From: Dimorphilus gyrociliatus
Lineage: Eukaryota; Animalia; Annelida
DNA length: 64,000 bases
NCBI GenBank assembly: GCA_904063045.1
Contig: CAJFCJ010000008.1
Coordinates: 992,001 to 1,056,000 of the forward strand
Direction of reading: 5' to 3'
In this document: one piece after another, positions 12,489-20,803 of the stretch
Numbering within the stretch: position 1 is the first letter of the stretch
How the letters are laid out: every line of letters begins with the position of its first letter
Translations under genes and position numbers: made by a program
Notes under the pieces: generated by a model
The model's database searches: none
The model's input: the letters and a program-made list of their open reading frames with translations, nothing else
What the model was told of the DNA's origin: nothing

Positions 12489-13388
12489 GGCGGCTACTTT
12501 TTACTGTTAAAAAAAGGAGAGATTGTATTTCTCTACGAATTTTTCATTAAGTATTCAAGTTAACAATTAAGTAATATGCAGAAATCTTTTAAATATACTT
12601 AACTTATCTTACTTTTAATAAGTTTTAATAAAATATCTAGAGAAAAACTTACTTAAAAAAGAATAAAATGCAGAGAAAAGACGGAAAGAAGCGTTCGAAA
12701 GCTTGCGTACTGCGAAACTGCACAGATATTTCAACCGCTAAGCAGAAGCGCCCTTCTAAAAATAGAAAACTGCAAGTAAATATGCAGCTTTTGCTCCAAC
12801 CTTTCGCTGGTAGCCTATATATTTTTCGCTGTACTTGCGTTTCCCTCTCTATCTCTCTAGCTTTCTAAACCCTCCCCCCTCTCTTTATACGTTTTTCTTA
12901 TGCCTTATGAAAAAATTCCAAAGGTTTTTTTTTCGTTGCATTGGCCATTCTATAAATTTTTACGATTTATACATAGTTCTTTTTTCTTTCTACACCGCCC
13001 CCATTACACAATCTAAGTTTGTTCCCCTAGTTTTATTTTAATCCAATCTCTTATCTATTTATAACAATGAAAATTCAATACAATATAATATTGGTTATTT
13101 TAGCATTAAATAAATATATTCAAATATTTTTAAACGCCAATCGCATTCTTCTTTAATGATGTAGGGAAGTAATTAAGATAGGCCTATGAGTTTGAAGGAA
13201 TCCAGTTTCTTTATATTTTAAGAATTCATTTCACACTATTTATCCTTGAAATATCTTTTAACATTATTGTTTTTATTGTAAGAAAACGAGTTATTTTTCA
13301 TTTAAAATAAAAATTATATATATATGCAGCAAATACAGAGCATATACACTTTTGCAGTATATAAAAATACTGTATACTGTACAACGTA

Positions 13389-13390
<2 letters not shown>

Positions 13391-13433
<43 letters not shown>
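13391..13433. repeat. (TA)21 microsatellite
   Basis: Perfect TA dinucleotide run, downstream of the Pol lambda stop. Confidence 0.95.
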
Positions 13434-13436
<3 letters not shown>

Positions 13437-13509
13437 GGTAGATGTTATGCTACTTCGAATAATTATTTGTTGATATTTATTAATAATTTTAAAACAAAAT
13501 ATTCAGCAA

Positions 13510-16500
13510 TCAGTGGTCTCGTTCGTTCGGTGGTAGATATTTTAAACCCAGATGCTTAAACACTGATTCTTCGGTCGGAGTAGGCAAAGGTACGCCTGGA
13601 TTTAATTTTTCTCCTCTCTGTAGGTAAAAACTATTTGTAGTTTTTTCTATTTTTTTTTCTTATTGGCCTATAGGTAATTATATGTACCTTTCGAACAACA
13701 CCCTTATTTAGTGAATGTTCGGACAGAGACATACCCATTTTGCCCGCTAGATGCCTCATAGAACGATTGAAATGTGCAGAACCCGTAAAATACATTATGG
13801 CGCATGCGTATTCATCTCTGGGCACGGTTATTATATCAATTCGTCTGTGTTTTGCCCCCTCCTCATCTAGCTTGCAAACACCTAAGTACTTGCTCTGCCC
13901 TCCTTTCTGCTGCAGAGAAACAAGATGGTCTGTTAAAAAGCTACCTAGCCTCTTTATAATCTTTGGTAGGAGATCATGGTGAGACTTTCCGTCGGGATGA
14001 GTTATTAAAAAATCTACATCACCACATGTCTCTTTACCTCTTCTGTACGATCCACAGCAGAGTATCACTAAATCTGCATCAATTCCTAGACATTTCTCCC
14101 TGACAAAGTCATCAATTCTACCAGCTTCTTCTCGAGGCATTCTTTCTAGGAGATCGTCGTAATGTTTAAGGCCTATCTGTTGCGGTCTGGTCAATTTGGC
14201 TTTATTTCGAACATCTTCAAGAGTTTTAATGCCCTGAGATACCCACTGTCTAGCCGTTGTCTGCCCTACACCCCAGATTCCTGATAAAGTTGAAATTGCC
14301 TTTATATCTTCTTGATTTGAAAGTTCCTCAAGCTTCCTTAAACCGCCTGTCTCAACTATTTCCCATATCTTATTCGCTACCCGTTCACCAACCCCAGGTA
14401 TAGCAAGTGCTTCTTCAAAAGAGGTTATTGGTCTTGGATAGCGTTTGACGGCCGCAGCCGCCTTCCTATAAGAGAATGTGCGCCATCTATCACCAGTTGA
14501 TTCGTAGGTTGTAGCAAGAGCCTGAAATTAAATATGTAAACAAAGGAATCAAGGAGTTCATTCATTCATATTTTCCTTTAGCGTAAGAGAATAAAAGCAA
14601 AATTCATTTGATAAAAGATATTTTCAACAAAACCAAAAAAAATTCAGAACAAATATTCATTGCTAAATGTTTTTTCATTTGCTACTGAACTTTTGTCATA
14701 TGTGGTGAATATATATATATTAGTATATATGCACAGTAGAGATTATTTTTCTAGGCAATTACATATTTAAGATACATTTGTCAAGACTTTCGGTCAATTT
14801 TTTGATAGTGAGACATATGTAAAAGTATAATTAACTACGAAATAAAAATGTCTAAAGAATGTAAAACCAACAAAATAGTGTCTAGAAAAACAGTCCCTTA
14901 TTTATATACTGTATATACATTTTGTATATGCACACTTTGTGTAAAATGTTGAAATACTGTATCTTTTTCACAATTATTCTTCAGTTGAACATAGTCTAGC
15001 GTCCCTAAGTTGTAAAATTCCACCACAAATTTGGACTATACCACACAGGAGAAAGGCTAAAGAAGGATTCGCTGTTTTTTCATATATACTACCAAAAGCT
15101 GTTATTGACACCAACGTTGCTAATCCGTGGACCGTTAATATTATTGCCAAACCGTTTGCTATAAATTCTGGTTTTTTTACAATTTCTACAGCTACAGAGA
15201 GTGTAAGTGGTATATAAGTCGCTGTAATTGAAAGGAAAATATAAAATTCTCTTTGTGTTTGACTTTTAAATGACGAAAGGTTAAAACAAACCTGATATCA
15301 TGCCAAATAAACAAGCATAAATAATTAATAGATTATAAGTTCTCATATAAAAAGATGCTGATGTTAAAATTCCTCCTAGAATTGAAAAAATACCGAAAAC
15401 AAAATTCTTGTCAAACCAAGCTTTATCTCCTAAATAGCCTACAAGCGGGCGCACAGTCGTTGAACATGCGCCCATAATTGCAACTAGAACTGCAGCATTC
15501 ATTTTAGAAATACCATTGCTTTCAGCTTTAATTGGTAGCATCATAAACGGTACAACATGCCCATACAATAGGGTAAAATTTGAAAAGCAATAAATAATGA
15601 ATCTTTTATTTTTTAGGATTTCTTTATTGAAACGAGAAGACCTTTTCTTTTCAAGAAGGGATTTTGACAATAGGGGACCCGGTTTAAGTATGGCAGCTAT
15701 CAAGCAACCATGAAGTTGTAGACCACCAATTATCAAAACAGCTCCCCGCCAAGAATACTTATTGATTAGAAGTCTTGTAATAGGTCCCCAAAGCATAGAA
15801 CCTACGCTTATTCCAGTCATAATAACACTCAAGGAAAAGGCTTTTTTCTTCTGGAACCAATGAGAAACTGCAACTGGGGCTCCTAGTTGGTAACAGCTAT
15901 AACCAACCCCAGACACAATACCCATGCTAAAATAATAAACAATTACATTTCTGACGAGAAACGTTGTCAGGCAACATAAAGCTAGTATTAAACTACCACT
16001 AAAAACAACAACCCTGCATCCAAATCTGTGCACAATTGGACCCAGCAGCACTCCACTGAGACCTAAAAATGAAGATAACAAAGCTCCTATAAATGCTATG
16101 TTACTAGCTCTTTGTTCAGTAGAATCTATTATATCAACCATCATTATTCCAAACGAGGTTAAAGAACAACCTGTTAGCACCTCTAAAAAAAATGCTGAGA
16201 CCAATATCACCCAGGCATATCCGGAATCTGTTGAATCCTCTGACAAATTTATACATTTTGTATTTTTTTTAGAACCATGCTCTCCGTGCTCTTCGTCATC
16301 GCAATAAACACATTTAGTATCCGTTGATACCTGTTTAGTCTCTAATTCTAGATTTTTTATACAATCATTATTTTCTTCTGTCATTGAGTCTTTTGACATC
16401 CTTTGTAGTAAAATTAAGAGCTAATAAATTGCGTACAGATGTATTCATGGAACATTAAAATCCAGTTAATGTTGACGTGAAAAAAAATAGTCAATAGTGT

Positions 16501-18990
16501 TAGAACCGGTGCTTATGAGCAAAAATCGATTAGGAATATAGACTGTATACAGTTATGACGTACGTTTTGATTTGAAATGCTACTAAGAATACCAAGCTGT
16601 AGTAAATACCTCTAAAATTGCTTCCGGTTATTATTTACCATGCAATATGGAATCATTCAAACAAGGATTTAGAGATAAGCATTTAATATATCGCAAAACG
16701 TAGCTTATTCTTTCGATTTTGCAATTTTTAACAACAAGAATATGACCTTGTTCTGAATTTTTTTCTATAAGAGAGTGGAATATATTTTAATATATTCCTT
16801 ACAAATTGTGTCAATTGAAATTGTTAATATGACTATAATATATAGTAAAAATCGTTCGATAATACATATCATAATAATTGACAAACCTCTAATTTTTCGG
16901 TTATTATGCTGTTTAGATTTGAATGTTTTACTTTAGATGACTTTGCACATATCCATTTTTCAGGCTAAATTGGTTAATTATTATCTTTATTGTTAGAGAT
17001 CGAGATAAACATTTGATAAGGAAAAAGACAAACTCACCGAAATTTTCCATTTCTTTTCAGGTATATCGTTATCGCTTTCCGATAAGGAAAGGGAACCTTC
17101 TCCCGACGAAGCATTAAAATCAGGGGGTAAAAAAGCAGGTTCTACCTGCTTCGAAGTTGATGGCGTCTAAAAATAACGAAAGTTTTTGTTATTTTTAAAA
17201 AAGAAACTATCTAGGATGAACAAAGGCCTTTAACGGTAGCAAAACAGGTCGATATTGCGAACATAGGCGTCGCTTCAAGATATTAGCATAGGCCGGCTAA
17301 TAACCTCTGAATATAAATCAAGTGATCGTAACTATTGAGCACATATTCAATAACAAGTTGAATCAACCAAGAGTTTCATTTTTCATTCTGTGAACGAAAC
17401 ACCTAATAAAGTATTAAGATGTCAGATTTCATACTTCGCCAGGTAAAATTTTTTTTATTTGTATTGTGTATTACATAAGATTGGCAAATAATTAACAAAA
17501 ACTATTATTGTTGGAAATGACGTTGTATACACAAATCTAATAAAATCAATATCTTTTCAATTTACTCTTTTGTTTTCACGAATACAGCTTTTTGAACCTG
17601 AATCTAGCACGTATACGTATCTTTTGGCTGATCCTGAGACTAAGGAAGCCGTTTTAATTGACCCTGTCATCGAAAAAGTTGACAGGGACGTGATGCAAGT
17701 GACCGACCTAGGCCTAAAGTTGATATATGCTTTGAACACGCACGTTCATGCTGATCACGTAACCGGCACAGGTTTGCTTAAAAAGAGAATTACTACCTGC
17801 AAAAGTGTCATAGCTAGGGTCAGCAAGGCAAGGGCGGACGTATATCTGGACCACGGAGATACAATTAAATTTGGTCGCTTTGAATTGGAAGTAAGAAGTA
17901 CACCTGGACATACGGATGGATGTCTTACTTATGTTCTTCATGAGAAAAAATTAGCATTTACAGGTGATGCTCTCCTTATAAGAGGATGTGGAAGGACAGA
18001 TTTTCAACAAGGTAAACTGTTTACTTTGTTCTTTTTCTGAACAACTAAACTGAAATATTTTATTTCAAAATTCAGGAAATTCAGAGTCTCTTTACAATTC
18101 GGTTCATTCTCAGATATTATCATTACCAAAGGATTATCAATTATATCCTGCTCATGATTATACTGGACGAAGTGTTACAACAGTTGAGGAAGAAAGTCGT
18201 CTTAATCCAAGACTGACTAAATCTCTTGAAGAATTTATACAGATTATGAATAATCTTAATTTACCTTATCCTAAAAAAATTGGTAAGTGTTAAATGTTCT
18301 AAATTCTATGAAAAGTAATTAATTTTCAAATTAATAATTTATAGACCGAGCCTTGCCAGCTAATATGATTTGCGGACTACAAGATTGAAGAGGAAATATT
18401 GTAGCAACTTCTACTAGAACTTCCAAAGAGTGTTTTCTTTTACTGTTAATAGATTTCTCAAACTAACTATTTCCAAATAGTATGTCCAGAATGATTTATG
18501 TGAGTTTGTGAATTTTTGTTAATTGAATACAAATTCAGTCTTTGCACAATAAAAGTATTAAAAGAATATTTGCTTTACTTACATTTAACACTGTTGAAAT
18601 GTTTTCAACAGTTTTTACTTGGGATGAAGTCGTCACTTTAGTTGATTCCTTTTCGCTATCACTGTCATTATCAATCTCTTTATTTGTATCCTTTGAAAGT
18701 AAGTAGGAAAATGTAGGGATTTCAGCTTTCGCTTTAATACATTCAGATAGCCAAGAACTTTTAACTATTGGCTTATTAACTTGTTCTAATTTTGTTATTC
18801 TTTTAAATTTTTCAAAATCAAGGGTATCATCAACAATATAATGAGTAATATCTTTATCATTGTATTCATTAACAATCGATCCATCAAATTTAATGATATT
18901 CTTCTCGAAAAGGAGCTTTCTGTTTTTACCAATTTTTGTTTGTATTACACAAATAACAAATCCATTCAAAAATGATGCTTTGTCAGCCAT
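13510..18990 (-). CDS. POLL: DNA polymerase lambda (family X): BRCT, Ser/Pro-rich linker, lyase and polymerase domains; 5 exons
   Basis: Exons 18990-18583 (BRCT: [13 protein letters not shown]...THYIVDD...[10 protein letters not shown]), 17166-17038, 16964-16887 (KWICAKSS...NSIITEKLE), 14521-13688 ([33 protein letters not shown]...SLSEHSL) and 13617-13510; every exon length is a multiple of 3 with GT-AG ends. Confidence 0.95.
14974..16399 (-). CDS. Monocarboxylate transporter family (SLC16/MFS) protein, about 452 aa, nested in POLL intron 3 on the same strand
   Basis: [10 protein letters not shown]-terminal MCT motif, [30 protein letters not shown] and multiple TM helices; exon 16399-15292 joins exon 15221-14974 in phase 1. 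Confidence 0.9.
17419..18388 (+). CDS. ETHE1: Persulfide dioxygenase ETHE1 (metallo-beta-lactamase fold), nested antisense in POLL intron 1
   Basis: MSDFILRQ|[15 protein letters not shown]...LIDPV...[11 protein letters not shown]...TPGHTDGC...[19 protein letters not shown]|...YPAHDYTG...EESRLNPRL...|[11 protein letters not shown]; TGA at 18386-18388. Confidence 0.97.
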
Positions 18991-19299: not shown

Positions 19300-20118
19300 T
19301 TAAATCAATCCCTTGTCTCGCATTTCCTTGGAAAAAGTTTCAGAGAAATTCTCATAATCGCTCCCTTCGGACTTGAACCAATCAGTTTGTTTGATAAATT
19401 TAATAAATCTATCGATGCCTTCATATCTCGAATATTCAACTCCAAATGGTTCTAATGCAGTAAGACTTGCTGCAAATGCAATATCGGCCAATGTTGTCTT
19501 TGATCCAGTAAAATAGGTAGAATCCTTTAAATATATTCTTTCAATCTTTTCAAGACAATCGTACAAAGAATTGAATTCATCTTCGGTTGGTTTACGTTTC
19601 TTAAAAGCGATTGCTTCCTAAATAAATCATAACAAAGATAAGGTTTTTATTATAAACACTATCATTACTATAATTCTGATAATTTCTACATGCTTACGAT
19701 AATGGCTAGTACTGCAGGATAAAAAGTAGTAGCATCGAAATAGAGGAGCCTGTCAATAACAGCTCGCTTTTTCAAATCTTTCGGGTAAAAATGTTCAAAT
19801 TCGGGTCTTGCATATCTATCGAACAAGTAGGTTATTATTGCTCTAGATTCCCAGAGAGCAAAGCCATTATCAACAATTGTAGGAACAAGGCCATGCGGAT
19901 TTATCTGCAAACGTAAGAGTTTCCAAATAATTTTAACGAGATAACAAATTTCAATTACTTAAAAAATGACTTACCTTTCGAAACTCTTCAGATTTCGTCT
20001 CATTACCTAATAAGTCGATAGAATGAACCTCGAAAGGTATATCTAATGCTTTGAACGTAAAAAAGACATTTCTACTAGGTGGGCTTATAAAAGAATGATA
20101 AAATTTAATAACAGACAT
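19300..20118 (-). CDS. Cytosolic glutathione S-transferase, delta/epsilon/theta-like (3 exons)
   Basis: SPPSR active-site Ser region, [45 protein letters not shown] and the TLADIA N-capping box. Confidence 0.95.
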
Positions 20119-20803
20119 CTTTATAATATAATTATTGTCGAAACTTATAAGCCAAATTACAGTTTGTGCCGACACCGCAGTACAAAGTCAATCCTACTTA
20201 TTAGGCTTTATCTTATCAGATTTTATATATTTTGGGGCCTATTCGAAAGTAAGTTTGAAATTTTCACCTGATAGCAAAAAAGGCATATCATTTTATGTTG
20301 TTTTTTGATTATATTTAAAGACTTATCTCTCAAGAAAAATATACACAATTCTTTCCTTTCTCTTTCTTTAGTTTCACATTAAAGATATTAAATCTAATGA
20401 TTATAGTTTCTTGGTAATACATTTAATTACTAATATAATTAATTATGCATTTTCATTTATTAGCATTATAGTTAGAAATGTGGACTGATATGTTAGTAAA
20501 GTATTTTGTATGCCTAGTGAAAGCATTAAAAGACTAGACCATGGACATCGCACGCTTTCAGAATATATCTTCATAAATGTTTTACACGTTTTAGTATAAT
20601 ATGGCGCATTGATCAATAATATGCGAAATAAAAATTGAACACACAGCATTTATTACATGCACAAATAATAGTTTCTTGACTCCAAATGGGCAATTTCATA
20701 ATAATATCCAATTTTTGGCAAAAATTATTCTAGTTTTATATTATTTTAGCATAGAAAATGTAAAAATAAATAAACCGGCATCGCGACTATTTAAGTACTA
20801 GTC

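What the first reader, a model, noticed from the sequence alone, without database searches (positions are those of the whole stretch)
13510..18990. DNA polymerase lambda hosts two complete nested genes, one antisense and one on the same strand
Seen: the five POLL exons are all phase 0 and collinear with Pol lambda (BRCT, linker, NSIITEKLE|ALATTYES, catalytic core). Intron 1 (17167-18582) contains the whole ETHE1 gene on the opposite strand. Intron 3 (14522-16886) contains a whole 2-exon SLC16 transporter on the SAME strand. Established: nested genes are mostly antisense; same-strand nesting requires the host transcript to read through the guest's polyadenylation signal and skip its splice sites. 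Inference: full-length Pol lambda may be coupled to or compete with SLC16 expression, and truncated BRCT-only or chimeric transcripts are possible. Automatic annotation would probably split POLL into separate genes.
Basis: partly seen in the sequence, partly recalled or inferred. Interest (0 to 1): 0.76.

Follow-up and report, generated by a model that had tools for sequence, protein, structure and literature searches.

The report
Two genes nested in worm POLL
In the tiny marine worm Dimorphilus gyrociliatus, the DNA-repair polymerase lambda gene holds a complete ETHE1 gene (opposite strand) in one intron and a complete SLC16-type transporter gene (same strand) in another; the layout is real and old, but it is an ordinary example of nested genes.

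Summary
On the minus strand, five phase-0 GT..AG exons (18990-18583, 17166-17038, 16964-16887, 14521-13688, 13617-13510) line up in order with human Pol lambda. There is no gap across the exon 3/exon 4 junction. Introns 2 and 4 are 73 and 70 nt. Intron 1 (1416 nt) holds a four-exon ETHE1 gene on the plus strand. Intron 3 (2365 nt) holds a two-exon SLC16-like gene on the minus strand.

The genome is Dimorphilus gyrociliatus: ETHE1 equals DgyrCDS7030 at 100% identity, and the assembly size matches the published one.

Independent assemblies of a related worm (dS above 1.2) keep the same order and strands, all POLL splice sites, and open frames in the exons compared (dN/dS 0.02-0.26). That rules out misassembly and pseudogenes. 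Helobdella and Patella have the exon 3/4 intron at the same position but only about 60-240 nt long and empty, so the guests entered old introns.

Transcripts could not be examined, so coupling, competition and truncated isoforms remain untested. The two tested mis-splice products hit stop codons within about 10 codons.

Same-strand nesting is well documented (29% of nested genes in Drosophila). This scan has noted at least five other cases in this genome. Verdict: a new member of a known kind, of low interest.

The parts
18583..18990 (-). POLL exon 1 (136 aa): start codon, BRCT domain and the start of the linker
   Evidence: Pfam BRCT, E = 2e-10. The best PDB hit is the human Pol lambda BRCT domain 2jw5, E = 7e-11. 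The donor GT is at 18582. It is an open frame in the related species, dN/dS 0.26.
17167..18582 (-). POLL intron 1 (1416 nt), which hosts ETHE1
   Evidence: GT..AG ends read. The ETHE1 CDS lies entirely inside it.
17419..18388 (+). Nested ETHE1 (persulfide dioxygenase) CDS, 232 aa. Exons are 17419-17442, 17588-18011, 18076-18282 and 18345-18388. Introns are 145, 64 and 62 nt.
   Evidence: Exons and GT..AG sites. Human ETHE1 4chl matches at E = 7e-60. It is 100% identical over exon 2 to the 232-aa DgyrCDS7030 of Dimorphilus gyrociliatus. dN/dS against the related species is 0.07.
18548..18562 (+). AATAAA and ATTAAA hexamers downstream of the ETHE1 stop, 20-35 nt before the POLL exon 1 boundary
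   Evidence: The position suggests that the ETHE1 3' end abuts or overlaps POLL exon 1 in antisense. This is an inference.
17225..17345 (+). Conserved non-coding block upstream of the ETHE1 ATG (candidate promoter or 5'UTR)
   Evidence: About 85% identical to the related species, which is higher than the flanking sequence. Single copy in the genome. No Rfam match. Only a weak predicted fold.
17038..17166 (-). POLL exon 2 (43 aa, Ser-rich linker)
   Evidence: AG and GT sites are conserved in the related species. That species has an in-frame 9-nt indel. dN/dS is 0.11.
16887..16964 (-). POLL exon 3 (26 aa): end of the linker and first helix of the 8-kDa domain (..ITEKLE)
   Evidence: Its only PDB hits are Pol lambda, residues 237-261. 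It is 88% identical in amino acids to the related species, dN/dS 0.03. Helobdella and Patella have the same exon end.
14522..16886 (-). POLL intron 3 (2365 nt), which hosts the SLC16-like gene. The intron position is ancestral.
   Evidence: GT..AG ends read. The orthologous intron is about 60 nt in Helobdella and about 240 nt in Patella and contains no gene.
16475..16588 (-). Conserved block 76-190 nt upstream of the SLC16 ATG (candidate own promoter or 5'UTR)
   Evidence: 75-78% identical to the related species, while the rest of the spacer is 12-48% with many gaps.
15292..16399 (-). Nested SLC16-like (monocarboxylate-transporter family) exon 1, 369 codons plus 1 nt
   Evidence: Pfam MFS_1, E = 3e-27. 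PDB hits are MCT2, MCT1 and MCT8. 70% amino-acid identity to the related species, dN/dS 0.07.
14974..15221 (-). Nested SLC16-like exon 2 (last two predicted membrane helices plus the stop codon)
   Evidence: A 70-nt GT..AG intron joins it to exon 1 in phase 1. 70% amino-acid identity to the related species, dN/dS 0.13.
13688..14521 (-). POLL exon 4 (278 aa): 8-kDa/HHH domain, fingers, palm and first half of the thumb
   Evidence: Human Pol lambda matches at E = 2e-98 over residues 263-538. Pfam domains. An in-frame TAA lies 3 codons upstream of the acceptor. 91% amino-acid identity to the related species, dN/dS 0.04.
13510..13617 (-). POLL exon 5 (35 aa plus stop): second half of the thumb
   Evidence: Pfam thumb profile positions 34-63. 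Matches Pol lambda residues 542-574. An AATAAA starts at 13481, 29 nt after the stop.

Best explanation
This is a single DNA polymerase lambda (POLL) gene of the annelid Dimorphilus gyrociliatus. Two of its four introns each contain a complete, independent protein-coding gene. A four-exon ETHE1 persulfide dioxygenase gene lies on the opposite strand in intron 1. A two-exon SLC16-family (monocarboxylate-transporter-like) gene lies on the same strand in intron 3.

The guests were placed by DNA-level rearrangement into introns that already existed. This happened in the dinophilid lineage, long enough ago for synonymous sites to have saturated between the two worms compared. All three genes have since stayed under purifying selection.

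The likely mode of working is inferred, not shown. Each guest is transcribed from its own promoter; the conserved blocks at 17225-17345 and 16475-16588 are the candidates. To make full-length Pol lambda, Pol II must read through the SLC16 unit and the spliceosome must join 16887 to 14521 over 2.4 kb. The guest's first exon has no acceptor and its last exon has no donor, so its exons are not picked up as internal host exons. The two tested mis-splices (host donor to guest acceptor, guest donor to host acceptor) are out of frame and stop within about 10 codons, so they would be non-productive. Some transcriptional interference or premature termination of POLL at the guest's poly(A) site is plausible, as in other host/nested pairs.
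For: Direct reading of exon and intron boundaries and phases.

Pfam domain continuity across exons 3/4 and 4/5.

Gapless collinearity with human Pol lambda 40-127, 237-261, 263-538 and 542-574. Pol lambda scores well above Pol beta (2e-98 against 6.5e-63).

Exon 4 cannot stand alone. An in-frame stop lies 3 codons upstream of its acceptor, and the first Met is at about residue 128.

Guest identities come, and ETHE1 equals the public 232-aa DgyrCDS7030.

Logan contigs from at least three separate sequencing runs of a related species support the layout. L001 carries GST / BRCT / ETHE1 (antisense) / MFS / PolX core in order, and L003 and probably L002 independently link MFS to the core on one strand. 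They align collinearly at 68-81% nucleotide identity.

In that species all five POLL exons and their GT/AG sites are kept, while the spacers are only 34-49% identical.

dS is 1.2-3.7 and dN/dS is 0.02-0.26 for every exon compared, with no stops.

Helobdella and Patella share the exon 3/4 intron position but have no ETHE1 or SLC16 there. In Patella and Littorina, ETHE1 and POLL sit on different contigs.

Pol lambda is single-copy in the genome. The nearest SLC16 paralogue is 32% identical, so the guest is not a recent copy.

The tested chimeric junctions give premature stops.
Against: No transcript evidence could be examined, so the 18583->17166 and 16887->14521 junctions are inferred from homology and conservation only.

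The species' splicing is reported to be tuned to short introns (median 66 bp, PMC7854359), so a 2.4-kb intron may be removed inefficiently.

No canonical AATAAA or ATTAAA lies between the SLC16 stop and POLL exon 4 in this species. Where SLC16 transcripts end is therefore unknown.

No D. gyrociliatus protein model for SLC16 was found in the database. Independent expression of the guest is thus supported only by selection and by a conserved upstream block.
Confidence: 0.85

Rival explanations
1. The guest and host share a 3' end. Under this reading SLC16 transcripts do not terminate inside intron 3. They run on into POLL exons 4-5 and use the POLL poly(A) signal, so the output of the two genes is a choice made on one transcription unit.
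For: There is no canonical poly(A) hexamer in the 452 nt between the SLC16 stop and POLL exon 4; only TATAAA at +68.
Against: Ten percent of shuffles of that spacer also lack a canonical hexamer. The related species has AATAAA 16 nt after the stop, so the absence is not conserved. Such an mRNA would carry a spliced intron far downstream of its stop codon and would be expected to undergo nonsense-mediated decay (general knowledge).
Confidence: 0.1
2. POLL is functionally split. Under this reading exons 1-3 (BRCT plus linker) and exons 4-5 (catalytic core) are separate transcription units, and no full-length Pol lambda is made.
For: The large gene-filled intron 3 separates the two parts. Splicing in this species favours short introns (PMC7854359). 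Public models of Patella and Helobdella show BRCT-only and core-only genes.
Against: The exon 3/4 boundary cuts the first helix of the 8-kDa domain and is an ancestral intron position. Exon 4 has a stop 3 codons upstream of its acceptor and no Met before about residue 128. Exon 3 is under very strong constraint, dN/dS 0.03. No core-only D. gyrociliatus product of 153-486 aa is in the database. The Patella and Helobdella splits occur with no nested gene present and look like annotation errors.
Confidence: 0.04
3. Assembly artefact. Under this reading the ETHE1 and/or SLC16 blocks were wrongly inserted into POLL during assembly.
For: None found.
Against: Logan contigs from at least three separate sequencing runs of a different species link these genes in the same order and strands. 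The flanks run continuously into conserved splice sites.
Confidence: 0.01

Closest known systems
Host/nested (including/nested) gene pairs of metazoans, as surveyed in Drosophila (Lee & Chang 2013, PMC3814207) and in mouse and human (PMC11694760)
   Same: Each guest lies wholly inside a host intron and shares no exon with the host. The antisense guest has more introns (three). The same-strand guest has a single intron, matching the Drosophila pattern in which same-strand guests are intron-poor (median of one intron when multi-exon). The guests evolve faster than the host core (SLC16 70% and ETHE1 86% amino-acid identity, against 91% for POLL exon 4).
   Different: The genome here is a 78-Mb annelid genome with a median intron of 66 bp, so the two host introns are long only because of their guests. 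One host carries both orientations. No expression data are available here.
Other same-strand nested pairs already noted by this scan in D. gyrociliatus (TUG in IQCM, OATP in SMARCC, homeobox in huntingtin, GPCR in a Mn-CDF transporter, homeobox in FRMPD4-like)
   Same: Same genome, same layout, a guest on the host strand inside one unusually long intron, and conservation in related worms as reported there.
   Different: Several of those guests were described as intronless, whereas this one has an intron and so adds competing splice sites. This host also carries a second, antisense guest. I did not re-check those notes.
Human DNA polymerase lambda (POLL; PDB 9g9l, 2jw5, 1xsn)
   Same: BRCT, linker, 8-kDa, fingers, palm and thumb in the same order. 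The core matches at E = 2e-98. The DVD and D palm motifs, and the Lys aligned with human residue 312, are present in the alignment (residue numbering is from my memory).
   Different: The protein is shorter (518 aa predicted, against 575). The linker is not alignable. The core is encoded in one large exon after intron loss.

Membership tests
DNA polymerase lambda (family X) | N-terminal BRCT domain closest to that of Pol lambda | tested here: met
   Pfam BRCT, E = 2e-10. The top PDB hits are Pol lambda BRCT 2jw5 at 7e-11 and full-length Pol lambda at 1e-9. The next hits are LIG4 at 0.003 and TdT at 0.013.
DNA polymerase lambda (family X) | 8-kDa HHH domain, fingers, palm and thumb in order, with the palm Asp motif | tested here: met
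   HHH_8, DNA_pol_lambd_f, DNA_pol_B_palm and DNA_pol_B_thumb all score above their Pfam cut-offs. The alignment to human Pol lambda shows the CGDVD and RRIDII motifs conserved.
DNA polymerase lambda (family X) | Closer to lambda than to beta, mu or TdT | tested here: met
   Pol lambda scores 2e-98 and Pol beta 6.5e-63 for exon 4. For exon 5, lambda scores 5e-6 and mu 2e-3. All named top database hits are Pol lambda.
DNA polymerase lambda (family X) | All parts joined in one mRNA and one protein | not testable with these tools
   No transcript data were reachable.
Host/nested gene pair | The guest coding sequence lies entirely within one host intron | tested here: met
   ETHE1 CDS 17419-18388 lies inside intron 17167-18582. 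SLC16 CDS 14974-16399 lies inside intron 14522-16886.
Host/nested gene pair | The host exons on both sides belong to one gene | tested here: met
   Collinearity with human Pol lambda, and the ancestral position of intron 3 in Helobdella and Patella. All host exons are under purifying selection.
Host/nested gene pair | The guest is an independent transcription unit with its own promoter and 3' end | tested here: inconclusive
   Conserved upstream blocks are present. ETHE1 has AATAAA and ATTAAA hexamers downstream. SLC16 has only a TATAAA variant here but AATAAA in the relative. No CAGE or 3'-end data were available.
ETHE1 persulfide dioxygenase | Metallo-beta-lactamase fold with closest similarity to ETHE1 rather than to glyoxalase II | tested here: met
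   Human ETHE1 4chl scores 7e-60, against glyoxalase II 1qh3 at 9e-14. UniRef names the 232-aa product (100% identical over exon 2) persulfide dioxygenase ETHE1.
SLC16 / monocarboxylate transporter family (MFS) | MFS fold with closest similarity to MCT proteins | tested here: met
   MFS_1, E = 3e-27. The top PDB hits are MCT2, MCT1 and MCT8, then bacterial SfMCT. The best named relative is MCT13-like at only 24% identity. The substrate is unknown.

The most novel reading that the evidence does not exclude
Same-strand nesting may be a recurrent, selectively kept by-product of genome compaction in D. gyrociliatus. Under this reading the guest's weak poly(A) signal lets the host read through, or lets SLC16 mRNAs run into POLL's last exons. 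Full-length Pol lambda and the transporter would then be alternative outputs of one stretch of DNA, and Pol lambda dosage would be set by guest activity.
Probability: 0.1. Interest if true: 0.45.

Novelty: new member of a known kind. Interest (0 to 1): 0.2.

Why it matters
The main value is practical, for annotation. It gives an exact, homology-checked five-exon model for the only Pol lambda gene of D. gyrociliatus. It also gives a two-exon model for a nested SLC16-like gene that seems to be absent from the public protein set.

It adds one dated example (dS above 1, conserved in a second dinophilid) of guests entering ancestral introns in a compact genome whose splicing favours about 66-nt introns. 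Together with the other cases this scan has logged in the genome, it could feed a genome-wide test of whether compaction enriches same-strand nesting. It does not reveal a new mechanism.

Tried and rejected
1. Public annotation around the locus. The lookup with the D. gyrociliatus ETHE1 protein returned nothing, because records of the window's own genome are left out. I therefore could not see how POLL and SLC16 are modelled.

2. Transcript evidence. No protein at or near 100% identity from RNA assemblies appeared for POLL exon 4 or SLC16 exon 1. A full-length 518-aa POLL product lies outside the length filter for a 278-aa query. The only joins were local reading-frame checks of two hypothetical mis-splice junctions.

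3. The conserved block upstream of ETHE1 as a non-coding RNA. There is no Rfam hit at E <= 1, it is single copy, and the consensus fold is weak at -7 kcal/mol. I read it as a promoter or 5'UTR instead.

4. The missing canonical poly(A) hexamer after SLC16 as a designed read-through feature. It is not significant (10% of shuffles) and is not conserved in the relative.

5. Identity of the related species. The run accessions were not found in any relevant paper.

6. A Littorina locus lookup failed. The Nematostella locus is a compact 400-aa core-only model with no nested gene call. I did not screen it with tblastn, so it adds little.

7. The Rfam miRNA hits at 13379-13452 are a (TA)n repeat artefact.

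8. The large representative-protein search and structure prediction were not used, because the family scans and PDB searches had already settled all three proteins.


Full report
**What is in the sequence.** The window is AT-rich (about 31% G+C) and eukaryotic. I read the minus strand from 19100 to 13400. It gives a five-exon gene:

| Exon | Coordinates | Length |
|---|---|---|
| 1 | 18990-18583 | 408 nt |
| 2 | 17166-17038 | 129 nt |
| 3 | 16964-16887 | 78 nt |
| 4 | 14521-13688 | 834 nt |
| 5 | 13617-13510 | 108 nt, including TGA |

- Every intron begins with GT and ends with AG.
- The predicted product is 518 aa.
- The introns are 1416, 73, 2365 and 70 nt.

- Pfam finds BRCT in exon 1.
- In exon 4, Pfam finds HHH_8 starting at profile position 14, then the Pol lambda fingers, the palm, and thumb positions 1-33.
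- Thumb positions 34-63 are in exon 5.
- Against the PDB, exon 1 residues 7-93 match human Pol lambda 40-127. The best hit of all is the Pol lambda BRCT structure 2jw5, E = 7e-11.
- Exon 3 residues 2-26 match only Pol lambda, residues 237-261.
- Exon 4 residues 2-277 match residues 263-538 at E = 2e-98, against 6.5e-63 for Pol beta.
- Exon 5 residues 2-34 match residues 542-574.

The exon 3/exon 4 junction across the 2365-nt intron is therefore gapless in the protein, and it falls inside the first helix of the 8-kDa domain. Exon 4 cannot be a gene of its own. A TAA lies three codons upstream of its acceptor, and its first Met is at about residue 128. The palm motifs (CGDVD, RRIDII) and the Lys aligned with human position 312 are present in the alignment. 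The residue numbering is from my memory.

**The guests.**

- ETHE1 sits in intron 1 on the plus strand. It has four exons: 17419-17442, 17588-18011, 18076-18282 and 18345-18388. The introns are 145, 64 and 62 nt, and the product is 232 aa.
- Its main exon matches human ETHE1 (4chl) at E = 7e-60.
- The SLC16-like gene sits in intron 3 on the minus strand. It has two exons, 16399-15292 and 15221-14974, joined in phase 1 across a 70-nt intron, and gives 451 aa.
- Pfam calls it MFS_1. Its best solved relatives are MCT2, MCT1 and MCT8.
- Its best named relative is an MCT13-like protein at only 24% identity, so it is a divergent member of the family.

**The organism.** I checked this in two ways.

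- The ETHE1 exon is 100% identical to the 232-aa 'DgyrCDS7030 [Dimorphilus gyrociliatus]'.
- The window's assembly has 77.9 Mb in 349 contigs. This matches the published assembly of about 78 Mb in about 350 scaffolds (PMC7854359).

That paper reports a median intron of 66 bp, no operons or trans-splicing, and splicing tuned to short introns. So POLL introns 2 and 4 are typical, and introns 1 and 3 are long only because of their guests.

**Not an artefact and not decaying.**

- The best database hit to exon 4 (90% identity) comes from Logan assemblies of several sequencing runs of a related worm.
- The 25-kb contig L001 carries, in order and on matching strands, GST, the BRCT exon, ETHE1 (antisense), the MFS gene, the PolX core and then troponin-side genes. 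Two other runs independently link MFS to the core.
- The locus aligns collinearly at 68-81% nucleotide identity.
- All five POLL exons are present with their GT and AG sites. Exon 2 differs by an in-frame 9-nt indel. The spacers are only 34-49% identical.
- Per exon, dS is 1.2-3.7 (saturated), dN/dS is 0.02-0.26, and there are no stops. This holds for all POLL exons and for the guest exons compared (SLC16 exons 1-2 and ETHE1 exon 2).

The arrangement is therefore old, the assembly is sound, and all three genes are maintained by selection.

**Origin.**

- In Helobdella robusta and Patella caerulea, tblastn with the window's exons finds the same boundary: the ..ITEKLE exon, then the next exon starting at exon 4 residue 2. 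The intervening intron is only about 60 and about 240 nt.
- Nothing resembling ETHE1 or SLC16 occurs within 10 kb of POLL in either species.
- In Patella and Littorina, ETHE1 and POLL lie on different contigs.
- The guests therefore entered pre-existing introns in the dinophilid lineage.
- Both guests have introns, so a DNA-level move is more likely than retroposition. This is an inference.
- Pol lambda is single-copy in the genome.
- There is a second, 60%-identical ETHE1 locus on another contig.
- SLC16-like genes form a family of 20 or more loci, but the nearest paralogue is 32% identical. The guest is therefore not a recent copy.
- Exon 4 corresponds to five or more exons of Helobdella and Patella. 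This fits the intron loss reported for the species.

**How it probably works (inferred).**

- Two non-coding blocks stand out in the conservation profile. Block 17225-17345 lies upstream of the ETHE1 ATG and is about 85% identical. Block 16475-16588 lies upstream of the SLC16 ATG and is 75-78% identical, against 12-48% for the rest of that spacer.
- I read both blocks as the guests' own promoters or 5'UTRs. The first is single copy, has no Rfam match and folds weakly.
- ETHE1 has AATAAA and ATTAAA hexamers at 18548 and 18557. They lie only 20-35 nt before the POLL exon 1 boundary, so its 3' end may touch POLL exon 1 in antisense.
- After the SLC16 stop there is no canonical hexamer before POLL exon 4, only TATAAA at +68. 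However, 10% of shuffles give the same result, and the relative has AATAAA at +16. I give this little weight.
- A POLL exon 3 donor joined to the SLC16 exon 2 acceptor stops after 9 codons. The SLC16 donor joined to POLL exon 4 stops after about 10 codons. Fusion through either of these junctions would therefore be non-productive.
- POLL transcripts ending in intron 1 or intron 3 would encode BRCT-only products of about 150 or 210 aa. Whether these exist is unknown.

**Annotation.**

- ETHE1 is annotated correctly.
- No D. gyrociliatus product containing the POLL core exists in the 153-486 aa range. A full-length 518-aa model would fall outside that search's length filter.
- No D. gyrociliatus product was returned for SLC16 exon 1 in the 203-646 aa range. 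The nested same-strand gene may therefore be unannotated or mis-modelled.
- I could not inspect the public gene table.
- The public models of Patella and Helobdella do split POLL into BRCT-only and core-only genes, although nothing is nested there.

**Comparison with what is known.**

- Nested genes make up about 10% of Drosophila genes. Of these, 71% are antisense, same-strand guests are intron-poor, and nested genes evolve faster than their hosts (PMC3814207).
- In mouse and human, more than a tenth of genes are in host/nested pairs, with only a slight strand bias. Guest activity can cause premature host polyadenylation (PMC11694760).
- The present case fits these patterns. The antisense guest has three introns, the sense guest has one, and the guests are less conserved than the host core.
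- This scan has already recorded at least five other same-strand nested pairs in this genome, each judged to be a known layout (I did not re-check them).

**Verdict.** The functional speculation is untested. The arrangement is a new member of a well-known kind, useful mainly for annotation, and of low general interest.

Noticed in passing
window 17225-17345 (+): A block of about 120 nt upstream of the ETHE1 start is about 85% identical to the related worm, more conserved than the neighbouring coding DNA. It is single copy, has no Rfam match and folds weakly. It is probably a promoter or 5'UTR element.
   Followed up: partly
window 16475-16588 (-): A conserved block (75-78% identity) lies 76-190 nt upstream of the nested SLC16 start, inside an otherwise unalignable spacer. 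It is a candidate internal promoter within POLL intron 3.
   Followed up: partly
L007:9433-14912 (Patella caerulea) and L006:9131-12843 (Helobdella robusta): The public gene models split Pol lambda into a BRCT-only gene (156 and 159 aa) and a core-only gene (389 and 325 aa), although the pieces are adjacent, collinear and have nothing nested between them. These are likely annotation errors.
   Followed up: partly
window 13688-14521 (-): D. gyrociliatus POLL exon 4 corresponds to at least five separate exons in Helobdella and Patella. This is a local example of the intron loss reported for this genome.
   Followed up: partly
G000 C1:2340056-2344696, C2:3593345-3595849, C7:643040-650539: SLC16-like genes form a family of 20 or more loci with several tandem clusters. 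Most have one long exon of about 310-320 codons, like the nested copy.
   Followed up: no
G000 C24:1052444-1053336: A second ETHE1-like locus exists, 53-60% identical to the nested gene. One aligned piece contains stop codons, which could mean an intron or decay.
   Followed up: no
window 14974-16399 (-): The protein database returned the D. gyrociliatus ETHE1 model but no D. gyrociliatus product for the nested SLC16 gene. That gene may be missing or mis-modelled in the public annotation.
   Followed up: partly
window 13379-13452: A (TA)n microsatellite just downstream of POLL gives weak, spurious matches to several miRNA families in Rfam.
   Followed up: yes
window 19300-20175 (-): A multi-exon glutathione S-transferase gene lies directly upstream of POLL on the same strand. 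The same neighbour is present in the related worm (L001:4121-4723).
   Followed up: no
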